DNA of 43,363 bases from Macrostomum lignano. Its lineage: Eukaryota. Within the stretch, counting starts at the first letter, position 1. Every line of letters begins with the position of its first letter. The notes below the pieces were generated by a model that was not told the DNA's origin, did not search any database, and was given only the letters and a program-made list of their open reading frames with translations. Location: assembly GCA_002269645.1 (NCBI GenBank), contig NIVC01002909.1:1-43363 (forward strand), in the 5' to 3' direction. A program made the translations under genes and the position numbers. Shown in pieces: positions 383 through 38,729 of this stretch.

Positions 383-3300
383 TTCTTCTTTCCACTTGTG
401 CACCAGAAATGAGACCTGTGTCATCAGTGTCTCGAGCTTCAGCTCTTCTTGGTTGTCCTCGGCCGCCTCCAGCGTTATGGACTTGTTCAGCGGAAAGAAG
501 TCCAGCTTTTCTTTTTCGTACTAGAATAGATTAGGGTGAGGGTTAGTGAGTTATTTTACGTTTTGTTTATATGAACCTCATCTTTGACGATTATGAAGAT
601 CACACGCCCGTTCAAATTTAGGAATCTGTTACAGCAAACGTAGTTCTCCCTTGCTTCAGAAAACTGTTCAGTTGGTAAACAATAAAATGTGCCGAACTCA
701 CTAGTCGAGATACATAGAGCTCAATGGCAGTGTAGTCATTCTCTCGGGTCTCCTCCAGGTAGAGCATAAAGAACAGGTAGGCCCACTGGTTGTGCTCTTC
801 TTTCACGTGCTTCTCGAATCCCTAAAAGCAAGTTGAGCTCATTTTTATAGAAAGCTGGGCAGCTAAAGCTTGTGTGCTCAAGACTTAAAATTGTTTTTTT
901 TTGTAAAGCCGTGATCCGGAGCCAGTCAAAACAGTGACTCACTTCTCCATGATGCTCAAAATCGTAGGCATTCCTGGAGCAGATGAAGCACACGGATGTC
1001 ATGTCCTGGTCGATCTGCCATTTGGAGTCTCTCAGCTCGCTGAAGGTGTCCACGATGATGCCGAAGATGATGTTCAGTCCGATGGTGGTGATAATGATGA
1101 AGAAGGAGATGTCGAATACCGATTTTGCCAGGTGATAATTGAACGGTCTGTTTTCGGGAACCGGTAGATACTGAAACGGTTTCGCCATTCGACTTTTACG
1201 ATTTCAATAATCATGATGGTTGCTACTTCGAAGCATTACACATTTGGTAGCTTTAGTCGATAGTGACTAGGGGCCTCACACGTCAGTGCTGCATGCAAAA
1301 TGCACAAATAAAAAGCAGTGAAAACTTAAGTGTCGTGCGCAGTAGCATTAGACTCAGAGTAGGAAGTTACGGACTATTAAGGTGGCAAACCGGTACGAAT
1401 TATGGGTTACAATAGGAAATTGACTAAGGTAGACAACACGATATCAAGGAAGTAGCTGGAAACATTCATCGATTACTTACATCGCCCTCCTGGGATAAAG
1501 TTCAGACGGGTTTTTTACTTTATTTAATTATTCACAGTGAAAATTTACAGGCAAACAAAGAGCATCAAACAAGAATTTCGAGTTCTTAACCAATGCTTAC
1601 GTCGTAGATTCCGGCGATGAGGCCCCTGTGGATCACGGTGACTGTGCACTGGTACATGGTCTCACAGAAGTTGCCAGTTGAGGAGTCATAAATTTCTCGG
1701 TAGAAAGCGAAACTGAGCAGCGCGTAGATGTAGAAGAAAGCCAAGGAGTAGATGAGTACCCATAATAGTGATAAGCCTGCAATGCCAGTACAAGTATTAT
1801 TTAGAGTACTAGTTGTCAGCAATCCACCGCTCTTCAAGCTGATAGAAATTTATGAGTCTACCATAATATCCGTTCACGAATCTGAAGCAAATATATCCTT
1901 ACCGTTCTTGGTAACAGCCTGGATAACCCTAGCCAGCAGCTGGTTGTGGTTGGCAATGTGCAGCAGATGGAAGGCAAAGAAGTAGCCATAGAAGACGGTA
2001 CCCAGCACTGACATCAGCAGGAAGGCGATGTAGTAAAACGTGCTAAAGCTGAACACGGAGGCTTGAAGCTTCCCTTCGGCGTTGTCCTCGTCTTCTGTGG
2101 CCGTCTTGGAGCCAATTCCGATCAGCTTCCTGAGTAAAAGAGTTAGAAATCTGAAGTTTTACCCTACGTTAGAAGATAGGTAGAAAAGTATGAAATGCCC
2201 AGGCGCAGTGAAGGGCGAGGCAGAAGAGCACAATGGAACCCCCTAGATAGCTATTAGAAGGCGAACAAAAGCAGCAACAAAAGTCAATTCAGATATGAAT
2301 GACCGAATCTAATAAAGCCTCTTTCCATTCCAGTGAGTAGCAACACCCCGCCGCAGGCACAATGGCGCTCAAACCGGCTGGGAGAAGCAAACCGAGGAGA
2401 GGCCCGACTTAGGATGACGTCAAAAAGAGCAATCGGCCAGTGGCACGCGTCAGAACCTGGCAAACTTCAGAGGAGAGTCGCACGGCCCGCCCACGGACTT
2501 CTATCCAACCCGAAGCTGCCCAAGAAGTCGAGATCAACCCCAAGTAGTTTGACAACCGAGAGAGAGAGAGAGAGGACTGTGTGATCATCTATGGACAGAG
2601 TTAAGAGAGCTCTCTTAGACTAAGCTCTTTTTCTGTGATCTTTCTATCCCAAAATTTATCCAACTCAACGCATGGATTTGCAAAACCCCGAATAATCTCT
2701 AACCCACACACTTAGCAACCTACTAGAACTAACTAAATTCGTGTACAACTAGGGGACTGAGTCCCAGATTTTTATTGTTTAAACCCCCCGCCGTTGCTAA
2801 CCACGCGAAGACACCCCACCGGCGGCGGGATAGGTAAAAAATGCCAATCTGTATAAAATAGACGCCCATCTCAAACTGGAGCGGCGCTTCTTCCTGACGC
2901 AGTTTTCAGATCTCAACTGGCTCAAATCCAAGACTTAAAAACCAATTATTTGCCTTAAAAGTTACGCAGAGCGAAATACTCGTGAGATTCAAATTCAGCC
3001 TAGATACTAGGAGATCCCGTCAGTTTATACGATTTTCTCTGACGGTCTGATAGAAGAAAGAGCTGTAAGAACCTTAGGCCGCTAGACCTATATTATAGAA
3101 AGTGAGAATACCAAACAATAAACCCCCAGAGAAAACCCGTATACTGAGTGTGGTGATTCCAGTGCAGGTTAATCAATATGAAAGCGAATTCGATTGATAG
3201 AGCAGAAACTTATTTAAATATAACTTTTGGTTTCTTCAGACACAAGGCTGGGAATTTTTTTAAATAATGCACGCTTATAGCGGTAACTTACGACCAAAAG

Positions 3301-6300
3301 GTACGAATTTGTTGCATAGACGGAAAATATGGATGATTGCTGAGGAAGAAACTGATCAGAATGAACAGGCTGAGTATATTGTGCACGATTCCAAGAGCAT
3401 AGGTCGCATAAACGGCTCCATCTGCTCGAACTGGCACAGGATCCGTGATATTTTCAGGCGTGTCCCAGCTGCTCAGCACCACAATGCTGATAGCCAGGCT
3501 CAGGATGATGCACAGGATGTTAAACGCCTTCCAGCCGTGCACGAAGAAGGAGCCGAGAGGGTTGCTGAGGATTCGCTTCTGCCACTTGATGTCCTTGATG
3601 ATCTCGCGAAGCCAGTCGGAGAAGTCGCGCAGCTTATTAGTTGGAGAGGATCTGTTTAAGTTAAATAAAGTTGTGATCGCTTATGTTGGGTCTTTCTCCC
3701 GTTAAGAAACTCCGTCAAATTATAGCGAGTTCATCAAAAATCTTATTCCGTAATAGGACTAGGAATTCGTATATCTTCTCTAGGGGCATGTTGGTGACAG
3801 AAATCTCAGTTTGGGGCAAGTATTAGAGCTTGTTAGGGATTATTTTTAGTTCTACGAGTATACTTCGGAAGACGCATTATTAAGAAGTCAAGAGAAGTTA
3901 GATTAAAAACTTAGGAAACTTTACCTGTCCACATCGTACTTAAAGCGATCCTTCACTTCCTCTCTCAGCACCTTCTTATCTTTGACGCGGAAGTAGACTT
4001 TCTGGAGATTATTGTCCTTAAGGATCTCAATGGACATTGTGTTTGATTGGTAGAAATCCCAGATGAGTCGCTGCTCGTCAGCGTCAGCATCTTTCTCGAC
4101 CATTGCCTCGAAGTTAACGGTCTTCATATGATCGAGATCTTGGAAACGCAGGAAGATGTGAAAGTACTTGAATCCCACAGCTATAATCGACTCCCGCGTG
4201 TCTCTGTCCAGCGCGGCGTCCAGATGTCGCCTATAGCAGTCGACAAAGACATTCAGAATGCTGTCGGCATCGATTGTGTCTTTGACTTCATCGGCAACCC
4301 CCGCGATGGCTTTCAGCCTCTTCTCCAAATGCGAGATTCCCGCGGCGCCGACAACCGCCTGCTCAGAGGCGTCGCGCTCAGCGTCACGTTTAACATTCTC
4401 TTCGATCATGGCCACGATGAGGTTCGCAATGGATCTCTTCAAATCCATTTCCTCTTGCAGACCGCACTTTGAATAGGATTGCTTAGACCGTAGCAAGTAG
4501 TTAATGTAGTCACAAACCTTGTTGTCGTAGCACACGGCCTGATTGCTGAGGTTTCCAGAGGCAAACTCGACCAGCGAGTCAAATATTTGAATTATTAGCG
4601 ATATACTTGACTTGTTGATGGCTGTGTAGGTGAGACCGAGGAAACGTGAAGTCTCCGCCACCAGGTTGATAGACTTGATGTTGTCCGGCTGCTCTCTCAG
4701 GTAGTCCTGCAGCTTAGTGTTCTGCCCGTCGCATACATAAGCGAGCACGCGGAGCACCAGCTCAATGTAGCCGTCGTCCTTCATCTGCATATTCTCATCC
4801 TCCATTACAATCCGCGTCGCCAGTTCCTCAATGTCACCCTCGTCAATGTTTGAAGTGGCCGCGTCGGCTGGCGCCACCCGGTTGCCTGTGGCGTGGCTCG
4901 GTGCCTCTTGGCCCATGTTTTGCATCTCCGTCGCGTCACCTCTGATCAGCTGACGAGTTGAGTCCGTGGAGCCTGGGCCTCGACTATCGCCAGTAAAACC
5001 GTGGTTGCGAATACCGCCTCCGCCGACGTCATGCAGGTTGCTGCGAGATGCTCGAAGTTGAGCCGTTGATCCTTGATTTCGAGTCTGCCGCCGCCGCATT
5101 TCCGCAGTGCTGCCAAGTGCGTAGCTCCGGCTGCCCCGCATTCGAGCCCCGCTGCCAGTGATGCTGCCCTTGCTTGATTTCAGATTGAGCAGCATCGAGC
5201 CCATCTTGCTGCCCTGGAGCGCCTCTGCTGAGATCCGGCCCTCCTTCATTGCCTGTTGAAGGTCTCGCAGCTCAGCGATGGCTTCCTCGATTTTCGCTTG
5301 ATGCTGATTGATGAGGGCTCGGCTGTGAGATTAAAGGATTGCTCAACAGAATAGTGCTTCGAACCTATCATAAAGGTAAGTAGAGGTGAGGGATAAAACA
5401 AAATACATTGCTCTCACTTCTCTTTCCAGGCCATGGAGGACATGCTGATCCGGTTCTTCACTGCCACGAAGAACTTCTCCTCGCGAGTGCCGTAGAAATA
5501 GTCCAGCAGGCTGCCCTGGACCTCTTCATTGCCGTTGAACAGCATGTTGGCGAGGAAGCTGAGCACCTCGCGCACGATCTCGTCCGACTGCTTGGATAAG
5601 TGCGGCAGCACTTTCAGCATGGCGTCGTGCTTGTTTAGCGCCATCTGCACCTGAGCGATCGCTGCGATTCGTCTGGAAGTCAGCGCGATTTTTATCGATT
5701 TAACTGCGCAGCAATCGATTTTCAAAATTAGGCTCAACGAACATTAGTGAGCGACGAATCAAGGCGGCCCACTTAATCACAATTAGATGTTGAGTATCAA
5801 CAAACTGACAAATAAAAAAGGAAGGTACGACCAATCTCAAAGTTCAGATCTGGAAGTGTTTTCCAGAGTTAATAGATAGCAGCCAGAATATAAGTCCAGA
5901 ATGACTCAGAAAAATGTATTTAATTTCAACGACAGCCTTTTACCAATCAGCACAATCCTTTTACCATAATCAGCACAATCCTTTTACCACAATCAGCATG
6001 TCGTCAATTTGAGTAAATTTCATACCAGAACTACCGGTAAAAGACCCTGGCCACTCATTGATGAACAAAATTGAACTGCTCGAATGCCTTGATTGCTGCC
6101 TTGAAATGCGTTAATCGCCATCTGCTATCTGAATTATGATTAATCCACAAATTTTTAAAACACATTTCGGTGTTAATTAAAATCACGCGATATATAATTA
6201 TGTATAATAAAGCTTCGCTTCTACAAGCGTACAATCATTAAATAGAAACTTTTTTATCAGATAGTATTTAAAAGGTTACCAGAGTAACTTCAAGACACAT

Positions 6301-9300
6301 TTAATGCTACCAGTGTTGATGCATTCCACGATAAATGTCGGTACGAATGCACCTTTACCTGTAATATAGTTTCTTTCCTCGACCAGCCATTCTGAAAGAC
6401 CAGCGGCTTGCTAATGCAGTGCAGTGCACTAATAGGCTCAGATAGAAGTGAACATGGAAGGCTATTTTTTGCAACGACATTTAAAGCTCATGTGAGACTC
6501 CCAGAAGAGAAAAAGCAGACGAAAAAGGCACTTACTCTTTGAAGTCGACGGTGTCAAAGTTGGTCGGCAGCTTGACAATCTCGTTGTGTATGATGGCCCG
6601 CAGCAGTTGAAGACACTTCACGTCAAGGATCTCCTGCTCAATGCGCTCCTTCTCATTGCTCAGCTCCATCTGGTTGGAGATGCTGTCAATGATGACAGTT
6701 TCCAAGTGGCTATATGTAGACACGTGCGTCAAGCATATAAGCTCAAAACAAAGCATATCTTTTACTCACAAAAGCTGTTCCACGAGCTTCCCAGTAAGTT
6801 TGTACTTTTGTGGGTCCGAGATCGGCCGATTGGCATCGATGAAGCAGGCCGCGTGGTCCTGGAACTCCTTGCCGAGAGGGAGCTCTTCGTCGCTGCCAAT
6901 TCCAGTGTATTCTAACGTGGTTTGGATTGGTTTTGGAGTTTGGATTTCGAACTGTCATAGCGTGAAGCATTGCACTAGGAATTAAAAGAGTCCATCATAT
7001 ATTCCTAGCTTATTTGATCGGTTTACTTGCAAACTTGATAAGAACTTATTGAATCAAAAATGTTTCCACATTCTGGTAGACTTTCATCGAGCATAATGTA
7101 CTACTATAATCTTCCGGCAACACTACAAGGGCGGGATGGCAGGTAGAAAACTAAAGGAAAATGACTAAGGGTAAAAACGCCTAGGTTAAATACTTCTGTC
7201 TTCAAGAAGCGCATCAACTTCTTAAACGAACCCTGGTCGCTGGGAAAGCCGATCTGGTCTTTGACGGTGTTCTCGCCTCCGTAAGAGATGCTGTAGTTGG
7301 TTGCAAACACGTTTAGCTGCACGTTCAGCTCCTCCTCGGATGAGTAGTACTCTTCGTATCGCTGAAGTTGTATTACGAGTATATTAAATATTTCTTTTTC
7401 TCAAATTTTCAGTTCATAATGCCTTTTCAAAAATACAATCTGCTTCCTTAAGCACCTTTCGAGCCTCGCTTCTGACGTCCCAGTTGATTTGGACGCCTCC
7501 TCCGTATTTTCCGCGAAATTCTTCAATAGCCTGTCAGAGTTTGATCGGAGAAAGGAAAGGCCATTAATGTTTTAGAAAGCCATTCGGAAATTCAAAAGGC
7601 ATTTCATCGAATCGTTTGATGAGTTTCATTTTTTCGCTTTGTCAGATGCTTTGTCAGATGTCAGAATCAAGTGAATTTTATATTACGAAGGCGCACAATG
7701 CACAAGTCTTACTGTACGAGGGTACAATTTCGGTCATAAATCAGAGAAAACTACTGCACATTGGCGCCTTTCATCTTAAGTATTATCCAAAAATCAATAT
7801 TAGCATTTTTGATGGCTGAGTCCTTTTAGAGCATAGATTACAAGCTCGGTCGGACTTATATCAATAATCAATAATGCAATTTCCGTAGCGCTATAATGCT
7901 TAATTATTAATTTAATTTGTCCAGGAATCAGTGTTCGTGGTAACTAAGATTCAAGAAAGTATTGTAACTTCTGTCCCATTCAAACCTTTTCTTTCACCTT
8001 TAGACTGCTAATTTGCCTGTCCTGTAGGTGTTTGTTGAAAAACAATCAACACTGTGTATGAAATATGTTTTGCTTTTTTGTTTTCAAACAACCAGTTTCA
8101 GCGCTACTCACTTTAGCAGGCAGGGTGCAAACTGTGAGCAGGCTGGTTGCACTGCTCAGCAGGTACTTTACGTACTTTTCCTCCGAGATTAGTGGCATTG
8201 CTGCTTCGATGAAGTTCTGCGTAAACGGGACAGCAGGCCAGTAAATTAGCAGAATCTTTTGTATCATGGGTAAAAAAACAGATTCTACCATCAAAGGACA
8301 TCTTTTTCTCTTACGATGAGAATCTTGGCGAGTTTGTTAATCTCTTCTATTTCGTTCGGGTGATCCTCCAAGTCCTTGATGTAAATGCTCTTGAAAAAGG
8401 CCTAGAAGAGAATTTTCAAGTGGTTATTTACTGAACAATCTTAAGGCAACCTGTGCGCGTAATTTTACTGTACGTACATTGACCACGGGGAGGGCTCCCT
8501 CGAACAGGTATTTCAGGGTGCCGTGAGCAGCCTCGTCTGTCATGTCCTGCTTCTCCTTGCTGGATGGGTCTTCCATCTCGCTGCAACGGGACGGTTCTCC
8601 TATTAACTTTCTGATTATCAAATTTTGCAGGCACAGCATCAATAAAACAGAAAGGGTATCATGTACTTTTTAGCATGAGTAAAAGTGCATTTTTCTATTT
8701 GACACATATCTACTAATTCTTAGATCAGGAAAATCGAAAATGGAAACGGGCTCAGTAACCCGAAGTGGCTCAGATTTCAGTGGCTCAGAGACTTCAGTTC
8801 CGATGAAAATACAAAAAAGTTAAGGTAAAACTGCAAAGCATGAGTCAGCTGAATCTCACTGCTCTGCATTAACCAAAAGTCCTACGAGTATCTTAAAGCT
8901 AGCAGAGAAGAGACAAACTCAGGGATGCTTGCGACAGGGACGAGCTATCTAAAGCAGATTAAAACCGAAAGCGGAACTACCACCCCACGGCACTCAAAGG
9001 TCAGAGGAGAGCGCATGCGGAGCAGATTTTCATATTACACTTGGGGCAGCGACTCCAGCCTGTGCTTGTGCGATCGCCTCCTCTTTGAGGAGTGCCTCTT
9101 GTGCCTGGAAAGCGGTATTGTCAGCAGATGCGGCTAATAATGTAAGCCCGCATAGGGAGAAAAATGAGTAATAATTTAGTAATAAATACTTGCACAAGCA
9201 TGCGTGAAAAAGGAATTATGATTGTGATTTTTGATCCGTTATTAGGAATGGCAATCGCGGCTATACGACTAATAATATTGATATTTCTGTATACACTCAT

Positions 9301-12300
9301 GCCGTTGGCAACAAAATTGATGCATGAATTTTTGGATATTACATTACATTTGAATCTTCACCGGCACAGGGTTCTGAGCCTCATAGTCGATCACTTGCAG
9401 ACTTGGCTGCTTCCTGCAAGGCAGTGCAACAGTGTCTGTGGACAGAACTGGAACAGCAAACTTGCTCAGGTATAAATGCCGCTGTGCTAAATAGCTACAG
9501 ATAGCTGGCTTGCTGACGTGGACGAACAACAGCTCAAGTTAACCCGAGCAGGCCATAGACTATTTTTACACCCCCGTAGCCAGCGATAGCCGGCGGATTA
9601 GCTTATACTCGTAGCAATAAACGATAAACATGAAAGCAAAAAACAAAGTGGAGTGGGGTGGATGGACGGGTGGGTGGGTAAAGTTTGAAGCTAAATGATC
9701 AAAGTCAAGTGCCAATTAATTAATTAAATCATCGATCAGCAACTTTATTTTGTGCAATAATTTCCAAGTGTCGGACAGTGTTTGTCATGGCTGCGGCTCA
9801 AATGCATTTTGATCCGGATACCGACTCCGAACTAGAGGAGGAGGAAGGCTGGCTAACAGCGGACAAGGGTAAAGATGAAGAGGAGGAGGACCTGCATCTC
9901 CAGCCAAATGAAGACGTCGGAGACTTGTCAACTGATGCTTGGGTGGCACGGGAAGCTGGGCAGGATCAACGGCCAGATGCAGACCCCGAGTTCTGGGGAA
10001 TGCCTGGTGTGGATCCTGACTTGCCGAGGCCAGAGACTGCTGATGACGATCCAGCTGCGTTTTTCAAGCTGTTTCTGACTGCTGACCTGCTGCAACAGTT
10101 CTGCGCTTGGACCAATGGCGCAAATTCGACGAGCTACAAGCATCGATGCCAAACCTGCCTCAAAGGTTCTCTGCGTGGAAAAACGTGACCGTGGACGAGA
10201 TGAAGAAAGTTTGTCGCCATGTTGCTTTACATGGGAATAGTTAAAAAGCCCGAGATCGCCAACTATTGGAGCAAAGATGATTTCTACGCAACACCTTTCT
10301 TCCAACAACTCGCTTGCCTGACAAGGGACAGGTACCAACAGATCAGTAGCCAGCTGCGCTTCTATGACTGCAACAACTTCGATGGAAACGACTTGCTAGC
10401 AAAGGCAAGACCATTTATTACGCGTGTAGCTGAGATTTGTCGCAGTGCATACATGCCAGAAAAGGAAATTAGTGTCGACGAAGAGCTTGTTCTGTTCAGG
10501 GGTCGCGTCATGTTTCGTCAATATATCCCATCCAAGAAAGCGCGATATGGCATCAAACTGTATTGTCTTTGCGAAGCTAGATCCGGTTACGTGAGCAATT
10601 TCTTAGTGCACTCTAGTAGAGCTGAGAATGAGCGATTCGGTCAAGGTCTCGGGTGTTGGGGCTGTCTCTGAGTGAGAAAGTCCTGGTGGAGGCAGTTGAT
10701 ACGTATTGGATTCACAACAGTGAAATGTTTTTTTCTAGAATCTGTCTTACTAGTGACAGAAGACAGTTGGTGCTCCGCAACAAAGAGACAGTCTGCTGTT
10801 CGTTTTTTATAGCTGTGACAACTGATAAACTCACTTCTTGAAGACGCGAATCTTCAGCAGCTGTCGAACAAGCTGCGGGCTCTCCACGGCGAGCTCCGCC
10901 ATGCGCCTCAGGTCCTCCCTCACCATGCCGAACAGCTGCCACATGTTGGCGTCGTGCGGCAGGTCTCCGGCTCCGCTCTCGATGATCCCGCCGGCCGTGT
11001 TGAGGTAGACCCACAGCAGGAAGCGCGCGAATGGCCGCTTGTTGTGGTTCGGGATGGCGGGGTCCGTCAGAATCGCCAGCACGTCGCTCACCTTGTAGAT
11101 GGTCTGGTTGATGGACTCGATGAAGCGGTTCTCGCCCTCAGCACAGGTAGCCAGCAGGTCGACCAGAGCGATCATGTAGTCGGACTCCGGCGTGCGAGTT
11201 GGCGATCGCAGCAGACCCTGCTGGACCTCTTTGTCCTGGTCCAGGCACTCAGCCACGTCCGTTCGCTGCTGCATGAAGTACTTCATCACGTAGGCCTGGT
11301 TGCGCTTGAGCGGCAAGTCCAGCTCCTCCACCTTCACCAGAGCGTTGAGCATGTCCAGGAACTCTGGGGCTCTCGGCCCATGCTGAGCAATCAGTGACAT
11401 AGTTCTGGCAATGTGATGCGGCAGAACTTTCATGCAGGTGTTCTTGTTTCCAGTGAACACCTCAGCGAGAGCCAGGGCCAGCTCGGACTCGGCGCCAACG
11501 CAGCTCAGCAGGGCGTCCAGGCGATCGAACAGGTGGTTTTGTACGACCGCGTTTCCTCTGGCCATGAGGCGCAGCAGACTGAAGCACTTGGCGAACACTT
11601 TGCGAAGTCCGCTGTACTCGTCCTGAAGCGAATTCGCAATAACTTAAGCATTTTGTACGTAGCACTGCGAAAATTCAGTTATTAAAGAAAGAGTAGGAAA
11701 AGTAGAGTTAAGTGAGCACAACAACGTCAGTTATTTAAACAACAAAAGTTAGACAATTAGTAAATCCGAGTGAAATTCTTTACGTATTTGGCTATCATGT
11801 AATGTTTTTAGACAACTACTAAATGCACTTCAAATGTGCCGTGCGAAAACATTTCATGTACAGTTTTTGGGTGTAATTTTCAGTAAAGAAACATTCTATC
11901 CTTAGCATTGTACAAAACAGGCTACAGGTACTCTGTAGTACTGTGCGATAAAGCAGGTGGTGAATCGAAAACTCAAGGAAGCAGCTTCAAATTTTTTCTG
12001 TGTGCATCAGATGCTCATCTACAAATGAGGAAAATATACCTTTTTCTTCTTTTGTTTTTTTGAATTGCGCGCGGTCTTGAAGAAGCAAATGGGTGGCAAA
12101 GAAGTGTTAACGATTTGGTAGAATTTGAACCGCTACGTATTTGAAGTTTATGTCTAGGAAATGGAACTGGCAAGACAGCTTGGCAAATAAAATGAGACAA
12201 AACGGCAATGTATTCATTGGTTTCAAGATTGAGAGGTAATTTGAGACAAAAACTTTTCCGGTTGGTGCAATGAAACGCTGAGAAAAGTGCGATGGACTGA

Positions 12301-15300
12301 AAGCTCATGGCAGGCTGGCCTTGCAAAGCCAGCCTGGTTAGACAAACCGTGTGCGTGATGGGTTGAGAAAAAATCTCCGGGCTTCTGGTTGTCAATGGTG
12401 CAATCAATAGGAAAACTTGCTCTTACCTGAACATTTAATCTCGTCTCGTTGTCCACAACAACGTTCTTGAGTTATGGGAATATGTATGTTGGGGCCGTTT
12501 CAAATTTAGTCCTGAGTAACATGGTCTTTAAAGAAAATTTCTAGTTCATTTGCGTTAGGCCGAACGAACTCTTAAAACCTTGGAATACAGCATTTCACGG
12601 CATCGCAGTTCAATTTTGATGATTCGATACGGTAAGTTAAATCGGCTCGACCGACTTACCAGCAGGTTGATGTCGATGTCCTGAGACACTAGATCGAAAA
12701 TATCGTTGAGAAGTCCGTGGTTGTACAGAATCGCCTGGTTCATCGGGTGCCTCTCTTCTGGCTCCTCTTCAAGGTGGCAGACCCTGATGAGTTCGTACGA
12801 GTAAGTGGTGTATTGATCGCTTTGTCAATTCATAACGTTTTCCCAGCTATCTGAATAATTGTTGGGCTTCATGAAGTGTCATCACTACGAGTAGGCTATA
12901 CGCCTTTTGTAACATGGATGCGTAGCTAGCTTTGTATTAGTTTTATAAATCTGTTTTATAATTAATTTACCTGCTAAATTTAGACAGAATGGAGCACATC
13001 TTTTCCACATCGGAGTCTGTCATCTTGGAGCCGATAAGCCGGCGCATCACGTGACTTTCATCGTCCACCATTTTGTGCACCGCGACCGACTTGTCCGTGA
13101 TGAGCACCTGGGCCAGCACTGCTCGCTTGAACAGCAGGTTGTGCGCTGAGTAGTAACGGTTGAGCAGCCACATTGACATCTGCACCATCTTCGGGTACTC
13201 ATAGTGGCTCAGGTCCTGCAGCGGTTTCAAAAGAAGCTTTGAAACGTGGTGCTTTTAAATTTTCGGAAAAGCCTAACTTATCCCTATACGTTATGCATTT
13301 TTTGTAACTGTCGAGCGTATCAAGACGTACGAGCAAAACATTGACGATGTCGAAGTCCTTGAAATAAGAGGACTCGGTGAACATTTCTGCCAGTCGCTGA
13401 CTCGCAACCGTATCGATGCTGAATAAGGTTAACAGGTTACTTCATCACGGCTATATTTGTATGCACTCCATAAAGTATGAGACTAGCAAGCTTTGAACGG
13501 ATCAGCTCACCTTTTATTTAGGTCGTAATTCTCGTTCAGTAAGCCAGCAAGTGGATCCTGAGCGCTACTCAAGGTATTCTGCGCCATAAACTGAACATCC
13601 TTGAACTCAGCCACAAACCTTTTTAGGCGAACATTGAATCGAAAGTTGAAAAACAGATCCAGAACTCGCATCGCTCTGAAAGGTGTCACCATTTTCTTTC
13701 ACTAATACTGACACGTCAACCGGCAGTTTTGTAAACGCCCCAACTTACTGGTGCTTTGCATCGACCACAGCCTTCGTTTCCCTGGATTTTTTGTAGCGAT
13801 CCACCGTCTGGTAGTGCTGCAGCACTTTGTCATAGTCAGTTGTGGCAGCTGCAGATTGTAGATTCGATTCGGAATTAGTTTCGGAATTTGACATCAAAAC
13901 TAAACTACGTGTTCGCAAAAAGGTTCGTCGGCTCTCAAACTACAAGCCGTAGCGTCAGACGTTTTTGTTCTATAAAACATTTTAGCGAAGCAAGTAAATT
14001 TAAGTTCCAGGATAGGTCAAGGAAGTTTTTTGGCAGTGTACAGAACTGGCGGTACGTTTGTGTACGAAATGATGTAAGAGTATCGTAGAGAATGGTAAAG
14101 TACAGTTTAAATAGTTCAAGCAGAGAAGTCTATAGTTTTAAAATGCTGATAAATATTTGACTCTAGAAAGCCAAAAATGCTGATTTACTTCCTGCCACAT
14201 CTGCCACCATCCCGCCGGAGAAGGCGCCTGGAAAGTGCGGCCATGGGATCGCAGTTTGAAATACAGCATCGAAAAGCGTCCCAGATATCCGGAATCAAAT
14301 TTGCAATTGTCAGTGTGGATCAAATTGCAAGTTAAATGGGATTAAAGTAATTTTTAAATTAGACCCATTATTCCTCAGGAAAAGATCAGGATTCTTGCTA
14401 AAGGCTGTGAAGCCTGGACTACAATAAATTATGCACCTCTGGGCAGTGGCTTGTCGTTTCGTCCGTCCAGCAGATCCAGCAGCGGCTTGAGAAGCTTCTT
14501 GATGTCGGTGGTGGAGTTGTAGTATCCGAACCTCACCAGATAATGCAGCATCTGCATCACGTGCGCAAGCAGAATGTTGTGCCCGACCTCCGAGGCCGTC
14601 ATGTCGTGGTTCTGGTCCAGAAAGTTGGCCAACCAGTCGCGCAAGGCTGGGAAGTAGCGCTGGGTTGAGGCGTTTCTCAGAGTCGTCTGCGGGAAGAGTT
14701 GAGTGAGTTTGTTGCTCTTAATACAATAATTCTAAGCTTAGAAACTTTAAATTCCTTTCCCGGCAAGCCGCGAAGCAGCTTCTCAAAGCCATCAATTCAG
14801 TTTAATAAATTAGAGCTCAACTTACCATTTCACTCGTCTTGGCCTGCGAATGCTTTGAAACATCGTCATATACGAATGTGAGGTCGATCCTGTCCAGCAC
14901 GCTGATGTTGTCGTCAACGTCTACGAACATGGTGGTGATGAGCTCGCAGTACTTGGCTCGCAGCTGGTCCGGCAGATCCTCATCAGTGAGGCAGATGAAA
15001 GCCTCATCCCAGGTGAGGTAGTTGAGCCGCTTTGTGACCACCTCGATTGACTTTGCGTTGCGACCCTAATTGGTAACGGAAAGCGAGATAACAAGATCCC
15101 TGATCCCGATCCCTGATCCCGATCCCTGATCCCGATCCCTGATCCCGATCCCTGATCCCGATCCCTGATCCCGATCCCTGATCCCGATCCCTGATCCCGA
15201 TCCCTGATCCCGATCCCTGATCCCGATCCCTGATCCCGATCCCTGATCCCGATCCCTGATCCCGATCCCTGATCCCGATCCCTGATCCCGATCCCTGATC

Positions 15301-18300
15301 CCGATCCCTGATCCCGATCCCTGATCCCGATCCCTGATCCCGATCCCTGATCCCGATCCCTGATCCCGATCCCTGATCCCGATCCCTGATCCCGATCCCT
15401 GATCCCGATCCCTGATCCCGATCCCTGATCCCGATCCCTGATCCCGATCCCTGATCCCGATCCCTGATCCCGATCCCTGATCCCGATCCCTGATCCCGAT
15501 CCCTGATCCCGATCCCTGATCCCGATCCCTGATCCCGATCCCTGATCCCGATCCCTGATCCCGATCCCTGATCCCGATCCCTGATCCCGATCCCTGATCC
15601 CGATCCCTGATCCCGATCCCTGATCCCGATCCCTGATCCCGATCCCTGATCCCGATCCCTGATCCCGATCCCTGATCCCGATCCCTGATCCCGATCCCTG
15701 ATCCCGATCCCTGATCCCGATCCCTGATCCCGATCCCTGATCCCGATCCCTGATCCCGATCCCTGATCCCGATCCCTGATCCCGATCCCTGATCCCGATC
15801 CCTGATCCCGATCCCGTCTTACCTGGCAGAGTTTTCCGAACAAGTCTAGCTGGTGCTGTAGAAACATGAATTCTTCTATGATTGTCGAGTTTTGCTGAAG
15901 CGTATGGGAAGTTGAATACAGGAAAATGATGGAACGCTATTGGAAATTTTGGTGGTATCATGAGTCATTGATACTTATAGAAAGCTGTAAATTCTGGAAG
16001 TAAACCTGTCGAGATTGACAATGGTCCGCAATCTAGAGAAAATGGGGGACTTCACGCAGGGTACGCTTTGCGAGAATGTGAATCACGATGCACTCAGAGT
16101 GACTGAACGGTGAGGCTAAAGCTATTTTCTCCATCTCACCATCTCCTCCAAAGAGTCTTTGTTCCGGCCATATGCTTTTAGCTTCAAATTGGTTGATAAA
16201 ATAAGTGAACACTAGTTTGGTTAACTTAACGCACTTCTCACTGTCTCGCACTGCAAAGTTTGAACTAGATAACAATTAACTTCTTTCTCCATCTCGCTGT
16301 CTCACCTCTTCTGGGCTCAATTTGCGCTTGTTGAGCTGCCGTTTGCGCGACTTGACGTGCGTGATTTGCACCGAGCCGTCCGCGTTTGTCTTCGACGCCG
16401 CGACCGCCTTCTGGTACTGAAAATCAGAGGGAGTCTAAGGGTTCCTCGGTTCTTTCAGTGTTTGGGTTATCACTCGTCATTCCTCACTGGTCATTCAATG
16501 ATCTGGTTCCTCACTTGTCATTCAATGATCGGATTCCTCACTGGTCATTCAATGATCGGGTTCCTCACTGGTCATTCAATAATCGGGTTCCTCACTGGTC
16601 ATTCAATGATCGGATTCCTCACTGGTCATTCAATGATCTGGTTCCTCACTGGTCATTCAATGATCGGATTCCTCACTGGTCATTCAATGATCGGGTTCCT
16701 CACTGGTCATTCAATGATCGGGTTCCTCACTGGTCATTCAATGATCGGGTTCATCACTGGTCATTCAATGACCGGATTCCTCACTGGTCATTCAATGATT
16801 GGGTTCCTCACTGGTCATTCAATGATTGGCTTAAACGGTTTGGCTTGGGTTTTGGTATTCAGTTTATTCTCGACATGGCACCCCGCTCACATCTTTGGCG
16901 AACTGAGCCAGCGAGACCCAGCGTCGCTTGTTGTCCACAGACACGAACACTTTGTCCTTCTCCTTGCCAATTTTCTGTCCTAGATCCGTGAAGAAGACCA
17001 GACTGAAGCTCTGGCCCTCCACCAGCCACTTATCCGTGATGTAGTTCTGGTTCTCCGGCATGCTCAAACCGTCGCAGACGCACAAGACGCTCAGCAGTTC
17101 GAGATACCGGAAATTCTGCACGATTGGCAAAAATATCAGCTGCAGAATAATTTGTCACTGAAAACAGCCGGCCGCACTCGAGCCGAAACTCACCTTGTTC
17201 TGTTTCAATAACTCGATAATTTCGTCCACGTAGCTGTGCGGAATTCTGTCAACAATCTTCCGGTTGTCCTTGATGAGCTCCATGATCATGTGGGCAGCGT
17301 TCAGGCCGACCTCTTCCTGCGAGTGGAGTCAGCAGGGGTTGGGACAGTTACAGACGGGTTCGATATCGGTGTATTAATTTATAGGTTTCTAGGAAACACT
17401 CAAGCACTTTGGTAACTTTTCGAAGCGGAAGTGGGGTAACACACGTAGCGCACGCCGGACGATGGTAGGGGGGGGGGGCTTCAATACAAGCGGAATCGAA
17501 TTTTGCGTGCAAAAAAAAGTTGTTGCAGAGCCTTTTTGGTGACCGCCAATTCGAATAAAAATGAAACCAGAACGCCTCTTTGTTCAGGCTCTCTTTATGA
17601 GAGTGGTCTACAGGCTATATAGCACTCTTGCCCCCCCCCCCATCGTATTTTTGCTCCTTTAAGTAACCCAAGGTGTCCCCAAAGCACACCAAGCCTCCCA
17701 TAAATATCCGAGGTGTCCCCAAAGCACTTCAAGCCTCCCATAAACATCCAATGTGTCCCAAAGCACTTCAAGCCTCCCATAAACATCCGAGGTGTCCTAA
17801 AGCACTCCAAGCCTCCCATAAACAGCCAATGTGTCCCAAAACACACCACGCCATCCATAAACATCCGAGGTGTCCCAAAGAACACCAAGCCTCCCATAAA
17901 CATCCAAGGTGTCCCAAAGCCCATCAGGCCTCCCAGAAAAATTCAAAACTACTAAAATGCTACCATCATGATGAACGTCACATCAATTTTTTAAAAACAA
18001 CAGTATCAATGGCGGAACAGCAAGAGGGGCATGATGGGAGACAAGTCTAATTAGTAGGTCTGGTTAGTAGTCTGGTTAGTAGCATTCGTGAATCCAGTCA
18101 GTACTTTTAGCAAATTCGAAGCAAAAAGTAAAATTCTTGTCTTCGACATTTTGAGCTCGACTTAGTCAGTGTGTACTTTTAATGATGCTATACTAGTATT
18201 AATAAAATCTGTGCATCCGGTTCGACAGGACAAAGCAAGGTACTGCAAGATACAAAAGCGGGCACAAAATTGAGCAGGTAATCCGGCTGGCACCAACCAG

Positions 18301-21300: not shown

Positions 21301-24300
21301 AATCCCCAGGTTACACCCAAGCATGATAGGCCTAATTATTAGATTATTATGATAGGTCTTTTATTATAAACTAAAAAATGGGTAATACAATACTGCATGC
21401 CCACATTTATCTTAACTTTAGCATTTATTTACTATTGAAACTAGGCCTAGGCCTTATTGCACTCATAAAGCTTTGAAACTAGGAATATTTAGGCCTATTC
21501 ATTTTACTACCTTATATCTATTTATAAAACTAAGCTGGCTCTAATAATTGACAATGAAAATCTAGTTTTTAGTATTAATTTAAAATTTGTTTATTAATTT
21601 AGTTATCTATATTCAGTTTTAATTTTATTTTTTATAGGTAAATATGATTTTTTAATTAGTATTATTTAATAACTTAGATTTTGGCTATTAGGGTCTAATC
21701 CAAATACTAAATAGTACTTAGATGTCTAATTGTTACATTTTTATTCAATAATCTTTAATTTTACTATAAGTATTTTGTACCAATATATTATCCTATCATC
21801 TATCTTAATAGATAGATAGTTATCATGCCAATTAAATTTTTGGTAGTAACTTACACTAGCAACCATTTTAGACAAAAGGCTGCAAAATCTAATCTTGTTA
21901 GATTTCAAACAGATTTCCTTATGATATAAATTATGTCTAGCATTGTATTTGACATACTTAATCCTTTGATCTTTCCAGTGCCTATCTGACTTCAGTGGAA
22001 ATTTTTGCAAAGCATCAACCTGCTAAAATGCCATTGCACAAGATGATATACTTTTGGATACCAATTAAAGTGATCCACAAAGTGTCTTTCCTGACACCAC
22101 AAGGTCTTCATTACATTTGACTTTAGCAAGTGAGTAAATTTTCTAAATGTTGTTTTTTTTAATATATGGATAAGGGTTAGTAAAAAGCAAGGGTCAATGT
22201 GGTTGGGGCAAAAGATGATATATCCTTACCTTTTACATGGCTAGTTTCCCTAAATTTATGATGGCATAGTTTGTAGCAAAATTTATGGTATAACCTTTTA
22301 GGAAAGTTCATTCCAATGAAAAGACAAAATTTCTCATTTTACCATTGCCCATACCTACCAACATTTTAGTGTGGTGGATGGACTCCAGCACTAGGCCTAT
22401 TGCTCATCATTGCAGCACTCAAGTCAAAGTTTTGCATTTTTGGGCTTCCAACATCAACTAGAGCGATAGTCTCAATTGGAGGCCATGGAAAGCAATCTCA
22501 AGCATGCTGGTAGAGCCTGGTGCCAACCTTGGAAAGAATTTGGAGCCCACCTGATTGTTAATCATTTTTCATCTGGCAGCTGCAACTGAGCATTGGAAAT
22601 GGAATTCACTATATCTATAACTGGCCAGCGGGAACTGCACACTGAGAAGCAATGCCCATGTCCTTCACCCCACATAACATTGAGGTCTCACTTTAGTGGT
22701 CTTAGCGATGTAGGATGCGATCTTCATAGACATGCCATTGAACCTGATCTGCTATGCCACATCTCAAGAAAGCTGACTAATGTTTTAAGGGTATAGTGCG
22801 GCAAGACTGAGTCTGATAGATAGTCCAATTTCAGCCACTGTAGGCCGACTGTGCAAAATTAATTGAAGCAAATAAGCTTCATGGTACTTGCTAATTTGCC
22901 AATTTTTTCTCTTTTTAAATACTGATATCTGCTTTTCTGTTTAGTTTAGCTACAAGTTGCGCAGCCATTGGAGCTAAGGCCGCCCACGCATTGCCTGGAT
23001 GTAGTGCTCCTCACTAACCCCGTGCATAAAACTCCACATGGCCATGACAATCCAACTGCACTGTTAGTTCCACAAAAAAATTCTATGCTGCATACATGCG
23101 CAACCTGGGGAATCACTCGGCCGTTTCTATTGGCAACACACATGTAAGTCGCTATTGGCTGAGAATAGTCACGTGACTACTATTCCATCCAATAGCAACT
23201 TACATGTGTGTGTTGCCAATAGAAACGGCCGGGTGAATCCCTAGGTTGCGCCCAGGCATGCTATGCCTGGTAAACACTTAACACTACACTGCTGGTTATT
23301 ATACTCATATTTCGACCTCCAAATTAAGCCAAGCCTTTACAGTATTTAAATTTACTTTTCTGATTTACTTTTGATTTACTTCATAGATACAAGTACCATG
23401 TCATACAAAATATTTACTCAATTTTGCCCTTGCAGTTGCATATTATGAGCTGTGCATCTTTGTGCCTGGTTTATTTTTCCATTTCTGAAACATCAAACAT
23501 TGCAAAAAACCAATTCAAAAACAAAGAACATTTTCTATTTTCTACATCAGTATGTATAAAGAATGTATCTATACATTGCTCTTTTAATGTTTCAATGCAC
23601 TGTATATATATTATAAATTACATCTTACATTCTTTGCAAGTCAAAACAGTTGAAAGTTCACATTTCAGATCTGTGAAACAAAATAAAATTCATTTGAAAT
23701 GAAAAAAAGTCTTGTCTTTTTTATTTACTAAGGTGAAAGAGAAGTTATTAACTTTGAGTTATTTATAAGAAAGACATCACCAGCAAAAATTAAGGTAGTG
23801 CCAATGAGTCTTGAAGTGCTAGTGTCAGCCAGCAAGCAGTTAAAGAACTGCAGTTGCTCATCTTGAATGCAGTGCACAGTAGAATAGCCTCAAAGCTTGA
23901 TGTTGTCTGGTTACTAGAGCACAGCAATCTTCTGTATGTTGACAACCAAACCAATTGCCAGCACAAAACCAACCAGCCTGCCTAGCTTTTTGGGTGGCAG
24001 GCTAGGTCACTGAGTTGTGACAAGTGAGCAGGACATGGAATGCCATAATGCAATCATTAGGTTGATCAAACATGAAGCATTGGCCAATACACAGCTAGTA
24101 GATAAGCTCAGAATGTAGGCTGAAAATCAGGCAGTGGCAATTGAGGCTTGTTGCTGGCAGCTGAAACAAAATATGTTGAAATATAAAGAATTTAATTGTT
24201 CAGGGTTAATGCAAAAATAAATATTATCAAAGGTTGTCAATTGTATTTTAATATATAAGTCAACATAAAAAAAAAGCTAATACATAAGCAAAAGGTACAA

Positions 24301-38713: not shown

Positions 38714-38729
38714 AACAGCTGATTCTAAG

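What the first reader, a model, noticed from the sequence alone, without database searches (positions are those of the whole stretch)
943..1776. IP3R-like channel with a rewritten selectivity filter (GLIAGIYD for GLRSGGGVGD)
Joining exons 1601-1776 and 943-1170 gives [27 protein letters not shown]. ITPRs have GLRSGGG(V/I)GD and RyRs have GGGIGD at this position. Here the glycine triplet is reduced to one Gly, the loop is two residues shorter and a Tyr precedes the Asp. The pore helix, S6 gate (LNIIFGII) and Zn site remain intact and no stop or frameshift was seen in the assembled exons. This suggests a maintained Ca2+-release-family channel with altered conductance or selectivity, probably from the poorly characterised invertebrate RyR/IP3R-like class (inference).
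Basis: partly seen in the sequence, partly recalled or inferred. Interest (0 to 1): 0.78.

Follow-up and report, generated by a model that had tools for sequence, protein, structure and literature searches.

The report
Flatworm IP3R-B channel lacking canonical pore filter
The window holds an intact gene for an IP3R-B-type channel, a third and little-studied branch of the IP3-receptor/ryanodine-receptor family; its odd pore loop is real, but every bilaterian member of that branch has the same kind of loop, so it is not special to this gene.

Summary
Minus-strand exons 1776-1601 and 1170-943 join in phase 0 to give ...[22 protein letters not shown]|YLPVPENR...[12 protein letters not shown]...CFIC. 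This is the only in-frame GT-AG join, and no hidden exon can restore GGGxGD.

The two exons belong to a 35-exon gene (W27809 to about W383) encoding about 2,590 residues. It has no internal stop and the full IP3R domain set. The last coiled-coil exon seems to lie off the window.

In trees the channel domain groups with the published leech IP3RB1/IP3RB2 and with limpet, nemertean, acorn-worm and amphioxus proteins. It does not group with IP3R-A or RyR. The source is probably a Macrostomum flatworm.

The rewritten filter is a family trait. All 24 bilaterian IP3R-B sequences lack the same two glycine columns. In this family the loop is the most variable part of the pore domain, while S6 is almost invariant. 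GLIAGIYD itself recurs only in M. lignano.

The gate residues, the zinc finger and the Ca2+-sensor positions (D/E) are kept. Five of eleven IP3-contact residues differ.

The gene is a new member of a known but functionally uncharacterised family. Whether the pore has altered permeation or does not conduct at all is untested.

The parts
383..27809 (-). IP3R-B-type gene: 35 coding exons from the ATG at W27809 to the consensus donor after ...KWKEE at W383. If that donor is read through, the frame reaches a stop at W311.
   Evidence: tblastn is collinear with the 2,567-aa Patella caerulea protein P0064. All 34 junctions are GT-AG and in frame. The model is 2,609 aa with no internal stop. Pfam finds Ins145_P3_rec, MIR, RYDR_ITPR, RIH_assoc and Ion_trans. 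The terminal coiled-coil exon of the orthologues was not found in W1-380.
1601..1776 (-). Exon 32: S5 end, luminal turn, pore helix and filter loop (...[59 protein letters not shown]).
1625..1666 (-). Pore helix [14 protein letters not shown], with the conserved Cys pair.
   Evidence: In the 27-sequence alignment one Cys is invariant and the other nearly so. Across the family, C88 is at 100% and C94 at 96-100%. The AlphaFold model places a helix at fragment residues 236-249.
1601..1624 (-). Filter-position loop GLIAGIYD, aligned to GLRNGGGVGD of human ITPR2. The middle two Gly are absent, Arg is replaced by Ile, the last Gly by Tyr, and the Asp is kept.
1171..1600 (-). Intron 32 (430 nt, gtaagc...tttcag), phase 0.
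   Evidence: Stops in all three frames and no GGGxG[DE]. It is the only in-frame GT-AG pair.
943..1170 (-). Exon 33: post-filter linker, S6 and the first half of the zinc finger ([76 protein letters not shown]).
1030..1128 (-). S6 helix. It carries the IP3R-type gate: N, F, G, V, D and R at the positions of hIP3R3 N2510, F2513, G2514, I2517, D2518 and R2524.
   Evidence: Alignment to ITPR2. Residue roles come from PMC8930994. Mean entropy is 0.79 bits in IP3R-B.
792..990 (-). C2H2 zinc-finger motif C-x2-C-x16-H-x4-H. It spans intron 33: CFIC in exon 33, and H...H in exon 34 (W821-702).
   Evidence: Read directly. It aligns to the ITPR2 CFICGL...FEEHIKSEHN segment.
25582..26322 (-). Exon 4: beta-trefoil/MIR region. 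It includes the loop [15 protein letters not shown] at the place of the IP3R1 IP3-contact loop FLRTTGR.
   Evidence: phmmer alignment to mouse IP3R1 5xa0. Family comparison.
3925..5322 (-). Exon 29 (466 aa): RIH_assoc/ARM3 region. It holds the two Ca2+-sensor positions, CDGQN (Asp at hIP3R3 E1882) and LVEFASG (Glu at E1946).
   Evidence: Pfam RIH_assoc. Alignment to 6dqj numbering. The site is defined in PMC8930994.

Best explanation
What it is. The window carries an intact, selectively maintained gene of the IP3R-B subfamily. IP3R-B is the third branch of the IP3R/RyR superfamily. It is present in many invertebrates and in unicellular relatives of animals, and it is reported lost in vertebrates, Drosophila and C. 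elegans. The source is most likely a Macrostomum flatworm.

What is shown. The protein has the full IP3R-type architecture:
- an N-terminal beta-trefoil/MIR ligand-binding region, RIH and RIH_assoc solenoids, and a six-helix transmembrane domain with pore helix and S6;
- a C2H2 zinc finger;
- the S6 gate residues (Phe, the Gly hinge, Val in place of Ile, and the Asp/Arg pair);
- acidic residues at both Ca2+-sensor positions (Asp and Glu);
- in place of GGG(V/I)GD, a loop that is two residues shorter and has a Tyr before the Asp.
This loop design is ancestral to all bilaterian IP3R-B proteins. Within the family it is the most variable part of the pore domain, while S6 is nearly invariant.

How it most likely works (inferred). 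It assembles as a tetramer in the ER membrane. It is gated at the cytosolic S6 bundle by the same Ca2+-driven mechanism as IP3R and RyR. It may also respond to a phosphorylated ligand, because the binding pocket is basic but rewritten. Ions would pass a luminal mouth that is not built from the glycine-carbonyl ring. That mouth has a loose G-[LF]-[IV]-x-[GD]-x-[YF]-[DE] consensus. The expected result is a cation pore with different, probably lower, Ca2+ selectivity or conductance than IP3R-A or RyR.
For: - Gene integrity and architecture.
- Superfamily homology: (ITPR 1e-35, RyR 1e-33). Fold: (mean pLDDT 73.5; best Foldseek hits are RyR and IP3R transmembrane domains, probability 1.0, TM-score about 0.5).
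- IP3R-B placement: the NJ tree gives the bilaterian GGG-less clade 95/100, the subclade with the query 82/100, and the sister subclade 94/100.
- With published leech references added, IP3RB1/B2 fall in the sister subclade in 45/50 replicates and the whole clade holds in 43/50. The distance from the query is 0.61-0.66 to leech IP3RB, 1.25 to leech RyR and 1.43-1.47 to IP3RA.
- Named members of the clade: Patella, Saccoglossus, Tubulanus, Branchiostoma, Dreissena, Sinanodonta and M. lignano. Capsaspora is the nearest outgroup.
- Family-wide loop: both Gly columns are empty in 24/24 IP3R-B sequences. Filter entropy is 2.05 bits, against 1.05 bits in 87 canonical sequences. S6 is 0.79 against 1.38. 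Position 7 is aromatic in 20/33 and position 8 acidic in 20/33.
- Purifying selection: dN 0.18 with pS 0.73 over 124 codons against L001. The filter is identical, and the two exons 93% and 88% identical, in an M. lignano fragment.
- Gate and Ca2+ site.
- The family is expressed. Leech ip3rb2 is highly enriched in touch neurons (PMC7992859).
Against: - Nothing here measures ion flow.
- In IP3R-A, single substitutions of filter glycines give dead pores: G2498S in IP3R2, and G2506R/A in IP3R1 (PMC7939385). The window protein lacks the residue equivalent to G2498 altogether.
- The loop varies freely among orthologues. That pattern fits a segment that no longer has to coordinate ions just as well as it fits a tolerant, wide mouth.
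- From my own memory of Alzayady et al. 2015, which I could not open here, Capsaspora IP3R-B neither bound IP3 nor released Ca2+ in IP3R-null cells.
- Five of the eleven IP3-contact residues differ: T266V, T267R, G268A, R269P with a 5-residue insertion, and Y567S.
- The trees are neighbour-joining on about 226 columns, not maximum likelihood.
- The last approximately 25-45 residues of the protein are not in the window.
Confidence: 0.6

Rival explanations
1. Non-conducting pseudo-channel. The protein keeps the tetrameric scaffold, the ligand- and Ca2+-sensing domains and the S6 bundle, but it no longer passes Ca2+. It would act as a sensor, scaffold or regulator, for example at ER contact sites or by titrating partners. 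The filter loop would then drift because it has no permeation job.
For: - The loop is the least constrained segment of the pore domain in the family, and it has no fixed acidic ring (acidic at the last position in only 20/33).
- The residue whose single substitution kills IP3R2 (G2498) is deleted.
- The Arg of GLR, the N2496-equivalent and the R2506-equivalent that shape the IP3R2 luminal vestibule (PMC13503717) are all replaced by Ile, Ala and Val or Pro.
- From memory, Capsaspora IP3R-B gave no Ca2+ release.
Against: - S6 is almost invariant over more than half a billion years. This includes the pore-facing Asn, the Phe/Val gate, the Gly hinge and the Asp/Arg pair that forms the cytosolic ion path. 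That is hard to explain without gating of a real pore.
- The pore-helix Cys pair and the first Gly of the loop are also kept.
- Most members retain an acidic or polar residue at the loop end (29/33) or at positions 4/5.
Confidence: 0.3
2. Artefact of the hand-made gene model. A missed micro-exon, an alternative exon or a wrong splice site hides a normal GGG(V/I)GD filter.
Against: - The whole loop lies inside exon 32, so no junction choice can change it.
- There is only one in-frame GT-AG pair, and the spacing matches Patella at 46 against 47 residues.
- The intron has stops in all frames. On the gene strand no GGGxG[DE] peptide exists, and canonical ITPR2 and RyR pore peptides find no second pore-loop/S6 copy.
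- L001 encodes the same design without any intron.
- More than 30 independent orthologues share the design.
Confidence: 0.01
3. Decaying pseudogene or recently released paralogue, in which the filter change is simply damage.
For: The filter motif is broken, and there are transposon insertions in the introns.
Against: - All 35 exons are open and all junctions are canonical.
- Identity to a limpet orthologue is 42-84% over nearly all matched exons, and about 37% in two of them.
- dN is far below the saturated pS.
- The same loop length occurs in all bilaterian orthologues.
Confidence: 0.02
4. A species-specific innovation: this gene alone re-engineered its filter for a new selectivity.
For: The exact octapeptide GLIAGIYD is seen only here and in M. 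lignano.
Against: The two-residue deletion, the loss of the Arg and the loss of the last Gly are shared by spiralian subclades a and b and by deuterostome members. The near relatives differ only conservatively: GFITGIYD, GMIVGLFD, GLIGGIYS.
Confidence: 0.05

Closest known systems
IP3R-B subfamily (Alzayady et al. 2015 MBE; leech Helobdella/Hirudo ip3rb1 and ip3rb2, Heath-Heckman et al. 2021, PMC7992859)
   Same: The query groups with these proteins in the tree. It shares their size of about 2,500-2,700 aa, their domain set, the nearly identical S6 ([20 protein letters not shown]), the CFICSR...YDFEHHG zinc finger, and a filter loop two residues shorter than canonical with no glycine run (leech: GLVGQIFD and GLVGDIFS).
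   Different: The query sits in the sister spiralian subclade b, with limpet, bivalve, Elysia, siboglinid and orthonectid proteins. The leech genes are in subclade a. M. lignano also has a subclade-a paralogue (P0070). The loop sequence differs (G-x-Y-D type against G-D-x-F-[DES] type). Neither the leech paper nor any paper I could open comments on the filter.
Canonical IP3 receptors (IP3R-A: ITPR1-3, Drosophila Itpr, leech IP3RA)
   Same: Overall architecture and best PDB sequence matches. IP3R-type Phe at the S6 gate, Gly hinge, Asp/Arg pair, C2H2 zinc finger, an acidic pair at the Ca2+ sensor, and six of the eleven IP3-contact positions kept or conservatively changed (R265, R504K, K508, R511, R568, K569).
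   Different: No GGG(V/I)GD, and the residue equivalent to the disease residue G2498 is deleted. The Arg of GLR is lost. The long luminal S5-P loop of IP3R-A is absent. The T266-T267-G268-R269 IP3 loop is rewritten and Y567 is Ser. Tree distance is 1.43-1.47, against 0.6 to IP3R-B.
Ryanodine receptors
   Same: PDB sequence similarity of the channel domain is almost equal (1e-33). The continuous S5-P-S6 alignment needs no large luminal insert. RyR transmembrane domains are the best Foldseek hits. The loop start G-V/L-x-A-G resembles RyR GVRAGGGIGD.
   Different: Half the size. Pfam finds no SPRY or RyR-repeat domains. The gate position has Phe, not Gln. There is no GGGIGDE.

Membership tests
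IP3R/RyR superfamily | N-terminal Ins145_P3_rec + MIR, RIH, RIH_assoc and a C-terminal Ion_trans domain, in this order | tested here: met
   Pfam on the 2,609-aa model scores all five families above their curated cut-offs.
IP3R/RyR superfamily | Transmembrane fold: S5, pore helix, S6 with a long cytosolic extension | tested here: met
   AlphaFold2 model with mean pLDDT 73.5. The top 50 Foldseek PDB hits are all RyR1-3 or IP3R3, with probability 1.0 and TMq 0.46-0.53.
IP3R/RyR superfamily | GGGxG(D/E) selectivity-filter motif | tested here: not met
   The window has GLIAGIYD. Two Gly columns are absent and the last Gly is replaced by Tyr. No alternative exon supplies the motif.
IP3R/RyR superfamily | C2H2 zinc finger C-x2-C-x16-H-x4-H after S6 | tested here: met
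   CFIC at W990-979 and H...H at W809-792. They align to the ITPR2 motif.
IP3R/RyR superfamily | Ca2+-activation site (hIP3R3 E1882 and E1946; PMC8930994) | tested here: inconclusive
   The aligned residues are Asp and Glu. The acidic character is kept, but E to D at the first position may or may not support binding. The third ligand is a main-chain atom and cannot be judged from sequence.
IP3R-B subfamily | Groups with published IP3R-B sequences to the exclusion of IP3R-A and RyR | tested here: met
   NJ bootstrap 43/50 for the clade including leech IP3RB1/B2, and 95/100 without the references. Distances are 0.61-0.66 to IP3RB, against 1.25 to RyR and 1.43-1.47 to IP3RA. This is NJ only; no maximum-likelihood tree was made.
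IP3R-B subfamily | IP3R-like size (about 2.5-2.7 kaa) without SPRY or RyR-repeat domains | tested here: met
   The model is 2,609 aa and has no SPRY or RyR-domain hits. Orthologues are 2,473-2,674 aa.
IP3R-B subfamily | Taxon range: invertebrates and unicellular holozoans, absent from vertebrates | tested here: inconclusive
   All named members of the bilaterian clade come from molluscs, annelids, a nemertean, flatworm, orthonectid, hemichordate and cephalochordate. No vertebrate protein appears among the 150 best, but absence was not tested directly.
IP3R-B subfamily | No IP3 binding or IP3-evoked Ca2+ release (reported for Capsaspora IP3R-B; recalled, source not readable here) | not testable with these tools
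   Sequence evidence only. R265, K508, R511, R568 and K569 are kept, R504 is Lys, and T266V, T267R, G268A, R269P and Y567S differ.
IP3R-A (canonical ITPR) | Complete set of IP3-coordinating residues and a GGG(V/I)GD filter | tested here: not met
   The tree places it outside IP3R-A: Helobdella IP3RA and human ITPR2 pair in 50/50 replicates, away from the query.
RyR | About 5,000 aa with SPRY and RyR-repeat domains; Gln at the S6 constriction; GGGIGDE | tested here: not met
   2,609 aa, Phe at the constriction, no GGGIGDE.

The most novel reading that the evidence does not exclude
Bilaterian IP3R-B proteins as a whole may be a functionally distinct third kind of IP3R/RyR-type machine. They have kept the gate, the zinc finger and the Ca2+ sensor under extreme constraint. 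At the stem of Bilateria they discarded the glycine-carbonyl filter for a short aromatic/acidic loop. They would then either conduct with a different selectivity (for example poorly selective or monovalent-preferring ER cation flux) or not conduct at all and signal by conformation. They may also be driven by a ligand other than IP3, bound in the conserved but rewritten basic pocket (DVHLR[VI]R..[RK]P[KH]).
Probability: 0.35. Interest if true: 0.7.

Novelty: new member of a known kind. Interest (0 to 1): 0.45.

Why it matters
IP3R-B is an ancient branch of the main intracellular Ca2+-release channel family, and it has essentially no physiology attached to it. The one expression study I could read found it highly enriched in leech touch neurons (PMC7992859).

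Every bilaterian member lacks the motif that defines the pore of its relatives, yet has an almost frozen S6 gate. That gives a concrete, testable question about what these proteins conduct, if anything. In human IP3Rs, single changes in the same motif cause disease by killing the pore (PMC7939385). A natural family that works without the motif would therefore be informative about how permeation in this superfamily is built.

For genome annotation the practical point is smaller. These genes are routinely auto-named 'ITPR type 1/2/3-like', which hides the fact that they are not orthologues of vertebrate ITPRs.

Tried and rejected
- Hidden or alternative exon restoring GGGxGD: rejected. I searched six-frame translations for the motif, translated the intron, and ran canonical ITPR2 and RyR pore peptides by tblastn against the window.
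- Pseudogene: rejected.
- Reading the founding IP3R-B paper (Alzayady 2015): it is not held under its PMC id or DOI. What it says about IP3 binding, Ca2+ release or the filter therefore rests on my memory and is marked as such.
- Literature searches for IP3R-B plus selectivity filter: these found no paper that comments on the IP3R-B filter. Most 'IP3R-B' hits were unrelated strings such as IP3R-BKCa or IP3R-binding protein.
- Looking for IP3RB accession numbers in the leech paper's supplements: none were found, but the sequences themselves were in supplementary file 7 and I used them as labelled references.
- dN/dS: only one relative with DNA was fetched (L001). Its synonymous sites are saturated, so only the bound that dN is far below dS can be stated.
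- Exact species: none of the proteins returned by the searches is a near-identical full-length match. The best are M. lignano fragments at 88-93%, so the species is given only as Macrostomum-like.
- Terminal exon: the C-terminal coiled-coil of the orthologues was not found in W1-380.
- A monomer AlphaFold model cannot show whether the four Tyr side chains face the pore axis. No tetramer prediction is available here.
Full report
**1. The observation**

On the minus strand, exon 32 runs from W1776 (after ...gcattgcag) to W1601 and ends ...CAC AGG GGC CTC ATC GCC GGA ATC TAC GAC | gtaagc. Exon 33 runs from W1170 (after ...ccgtttcag) to W943 and ends | gtgagt. Joined in phase 0 they read ...[23 protein letters not shown]|[76 protein letters not shown].

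A 226-residue peptide spliced from exons 31-34, which includes these two exons, matches ITPR2/ITPR3 at 1e-35 and RyR1-3 at 1e-33 in a phmmer search of PDB chains. Pfam calls Ion_trans on it. In the printed alignment human ITPR2 has GLRNGGGVGD where the window has GLI--AGIYD. The published leech RyR has GVRAGGGIGDE and the leech IP3RA has GLRNGGGIGD.

**2. No missed exon**

The whole octapeptide lies inside exon 32, so no junction choice can change it.
- I enumerated all GT and AG sites between anchors in the two exons. Only one pair is in frame and free of stops, namely 1601|1170. It leaves 46 residues between the filter and S6, against 47 in the full-length limpet orthologue.
- The 430-nt intron has stops in all three frames.
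- No GGGxG[DE] peptide occurs on the gene strand. Canonical ITPR2 and RyR pore peptides find only this one pore-loop and S6 locus on the gene strand.
- A related scaffold from a TARA ocean metagenome (L001) encodes S5, pore helix, GMIVGLFDQDYVPLPENR and S6 in a single uninterrupted ORF.

**3. The gene**

tblastn with a 2,567-aa Patella caerulea protein (P0064), and with other full-length relatives found in the representative library, is collinear along the minus strand from W27794 to W389. Low-stringency searches recovered the small exons that were missed at first.

A splice-site search between consecutive cores gave 34 GT-AG junctions. All are in frame and nearly all match the residue count of the limpet guide.

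The assembled model has 35 exons, starts at an ATG at W27809, has 2,609 codons and has no internal stop. Pfam finds Ins145_P3_rec, MIR, RYDR_ITPR (RIH), RIH_assoc and Ion_trans.

After ...KWKEE there is a consensus donor, gtgagt, at W382-377. The C-terminal coiled-coil of the orthologues is not found in W1-380. The last exon therefore probably lies beyond the window edge, and the final 23 residues of the model are likely intron read-through.

**4. Which family**

The closest proteins in both large libraries come from spiralians: Intoshia, Elysia, Paralvinella, Ridgeia, Capitella, oysters, Mya, Lymnaea and Macrostomum lignano. Full-length relatives include Patella, Tubulanus (a nemertean), Saccoglossus (an acorn worm), Branchiostoma, Dreissena and Sinanodonta.

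An M. lignano fragment (P0013) is 93% and 88% identical over the two exons and has the identical [23 protein letters not shown]. The source is therefore probably a Macrostomum flatworm. No near-identical full-length match turned up in the protein libraries searched.

A neighbour-joining tree of 147 channel domains gives these bootstrap values:
- a bilaterian clade: 95/100;
- spiralian subclade a (loop type G-[LV]-[IV]-G-D-x-[FxL]-[DE]): 94/100;
- spiralian subclade b (loop type G-x-x-x-G-x-[YF]-x), which contains the query: 82/100.
Capsaspora CAOG_04510 is the nearest outgroup, and choanoflagellate proteins with GLLSGGGLGE lie further out.

The supplement of the leech neuron transcriptome paper (PMC7992859, file 7) prints the sequences used to define leech IP3RA, IP3RB1, IP3RB2 and RyR. 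I added these and human ITPR2 as labelled references:
- IP3RB1 and IP3RB2 fall in subclade a in 45/50 replicates.
- The whole bilaterian clade holds in 43/50.
- The query is at distance 0.61-0.66 from leech IP3RB, 1.25 from leech RyR and 1.43-1.47 from IP3RA.

The gene is therefore a member of IP3R-B. The literature describes this subfamily as present in the bilaterian ancestor, lost in vertebrates, absent from Drosophila and C. elegans, and physiologically uncharacterised.

**5. The filter is a family trait, not a feature of this gene**

All of the roughly 35 closest homologues lack GGGxG[DE].

I compared 24 bilaterian IP3R-B sequences with 87 sequences that carry the canonical motif.
- The two central Gly columns are empty in 24/24 IP3R-B sequences.
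- Mean column entropy by segment, IP3R-B against canonical:

| Segment | IP3R-B (bits) | Canonical (bits) |
|---|---|---|
| S5 | 1.17 | 1.82 |
| Pore helix | 1.51 | 2.22 |
| Filter loop | 2.05 | 1.05 |
| S6 | 0.79 | 1.38 |
| Zinc-finger region | 1.20 | 1.87 |

IP3R-B is thus more conserved than the canonical set in every segment except the filter loop, where it is less conserved.

Across 33 loops of this length the consensus is loose: G(30/33)-[LF]-[IV]-x-[GD]-x-[YF](19/33; 20/33 counting His)-[DE](20/33). GLIAGIYD itself is seen only here and in M. lignano. Close relatives have GFITGIYD, GMIVGLFD and GLIGGIYS. Molluscs have GLSDGMYN, GIVEGMYS and GFVDTPYT. Deuterostome members have GLLESFHE and GLMENLHK.

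**6. What else is kept or lost**

In the numbering of human IP3R3, the residues named in PMC8930994 as pore-facing, gate, hinge or ion path map as follows:
- N2510, F2513, G2514, D2518 and R2524 are all identical in the window protein.
- I2517 is Val.
- The constriction residue is the IP3R-type Phe, not the RyR-type Gln.

The zinc finger has the spacing C-x2-C-x16-H-x4-H.

The two side-chain ligands of the activating Ca2+ site, E1882 and E1946, align to Asp (CDGQN) and Glu (LVEFASG).

Against mouse IP3R1, the IP3-contact residues (their identity recalled from the crystal-structure literature) map as follows:
- kept: R265, K508, R511, R568 and K569;
- conservative change: R504 to Lys;
- changed: T266V, T267R, G268A, R269P (next to a 5-residue insertion) and Y567S.

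The replacement loop DVHLR[VI]R..[RK]P[KH] is itself strongly conserved from choanoflagellates to bilaterians. This suggests a maintained, basic, but different pocket.

In IP3R2, the luminal vestibule is described as shaped by N2496, D2502 and R2506 (PMC13503717). Only the Asp survives here.

**7. Selection**

Over 124 aligned codons (S5 to S6) against L001, pN is 0.163 (dN 0.18) and pS is 0.730, which is saturated. The ratio is therefore well below 1, though it cannot be stated exactly.

**8. Structure**

An AlphaFold2 model of the last 388 residues, made with a 27-sequence alignment, has mean pLDDT 73.5. It shows a pore helix (fragment residues 236-249), a short turn over I-Y-D-Y (residues 252-255), and a long S6 (residues 264-313). 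All of the top 50 Foldseek hits in the PDB are RyR or IP3R3 chains, with probability 1.0 and TMq about 0.5. A monomer model cannot say whether the Tyr ring faces the pore axis.

**9. Interpretation**

Shown: this is an intact, constrained IP3R-B gene. It has the gating hardware of the superfamily and a non-canonical, family-wide, variable filter loop.

Inferred: it forms an ER tetramer, gated at S6 by the Ca2+-dependent mechanism, and its luminal mouth no longer uses the glycine ring.

Two readings remain:
- a conducting pore with altered, probably weaker, Ca2+ selectivity or conductance. The near-frozen S6, including its pore-facing residues, favours this. I put it at about 0.6 together with the family assignment.
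- a pore that no longer conducts, at about 0.3. The freedom of the loop favours this, as does the lethality of single Gly changes in IP3R-A (PMC7939385). My recollection that Capsaspora IP3R-B gave no IP3-evoked Ca2+ release points the same way.

**10. Novelty**

The family is known and named, so this is a new member of it. I found no paper in the accessible library that comments on the IP3R-B filter. However, I could not read the founding paper, so I do not claim that the family-level observation is new.

**11. Surroundings**

The introns carry a piggyBac-type transposase fragment (W10204-10668, + strand). They also carry three minisatellites and a perfect 524-nt inverted-repeat pair.

Upstream of the gene lie a retroelement (RT plus integrase, W30314-33109) and, on the + strand, an IQUB-like gene, ODAD1 and a Na/K-ATPase beta-subunit gene. 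A (CCCTAA)12 block sits at W182-254.

Noticed in passing
window 182-254: Twelve copies of CCTAAC, which is the telomere-type repeat (TTAGGG)n read on the other strand. The block is interstitial and lies just 3' of the last recognisable exon of the channel gene.
   Followed up: partly
window 20347-20870 and 24678-25201: A perfect (100% complementary) 524-nt inverted-repeat pair, 3.8 kb apart, inside the 5.3-kb intron 4. It could be a very young foldback or long-TIR transposon, or an assembly artefact. Smaller nested inverted repeats lie at about 21154-21312 and 23098-23251.
   Followed up: partly
window 15095-15815, 16480-16826, 17668-17946: Three minisatellites inside introns of the channel gene: a 13-mer in 55 copies (100% matches), a 27-mer in 13 copies and a 39-mer in 7 copies. 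Each creates long spurious ORFs in several frames.
   Followed up: partly
window 10204-10668 (+): A fragment of a piggyBac-type transposase (Pfam DDE_Tnp_1_7, 4e-36), antisense to the gene inside intron 20.
   Followed up: partly
window 30314-33109 (+): A retroelement pol region: reverse transcriptase (RVT_1, 1.5e-24) followed by an integrase core that scores below the Pfam cut-off. It lies 2.5 kb upstream of the channel gene's start codon.
   Followed up: partly
window 34842-43113 (+): Three neighbouring genes on the opposite strand: an IQUB-like gene (ubiquitin plus IQUB domains), ODAD1 (outer dynein arm docking, 7e-67) and a Na/K-ATPase beta subunit. A 21-mer minisatellite of about 20 copies at 38304-38714 lies between the first two.
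   Followed up: partly
window 25582-26322 (-), exon 4; also P0064, P0071, P0072, P0075, P0076: Where IP3R1 has its IP3-contact loop FLRTTGR, all IP3R-B proteins from choanoflagellates to bilaterians have a different but strongly conserved basic loop, DVHLR[VI]R..[RK]P[KH]. The alpha-domain basic residues (K/R504, K508, R511, R568, K569) are kept in the window protein, and in the bilaterian orthologues where the motif scan found them. This suggests a maintained pocket for a possibly different anionic ligand.
   Followed up: partly
window 377-382 (-) and 1-380: There is a consensus donor, gtgagt, right after ...KWKEE. The C-terminal coiled-coil exon seen in the orthologues was not found in the remaining 380 bases, so the 3' end of the gene seems to run off the window.
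   Followed up: yes
P0104, P0110, P0098, P0114, P0178 (representative library): A separate, unnamed group of IP3R-like proteins, known from ENA assemblies only, also lacks the glycine run (GLLDTIGLF type). It branches away from bilaterian IP3R-B in the NJ tree. Loss of the canonical filter may therefore have happened more than once in this superfamily. Capsaspora (GLENGLASVGIAD) and Hartaetosiga (GLRDGVIFPGGESE) are further odd cases.
   Followed up: no
P0070, P0214, P0215 (M. lignano) compared with the window gene: Macrostomum lignano has at least one subclade-a IP3R-B paralogue (GLIGDLFDN) in addition to the subclade-b type found in the window. Flatworms, like leeches, therefore keep two IP3R-B lineages.
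   Followed up: partly
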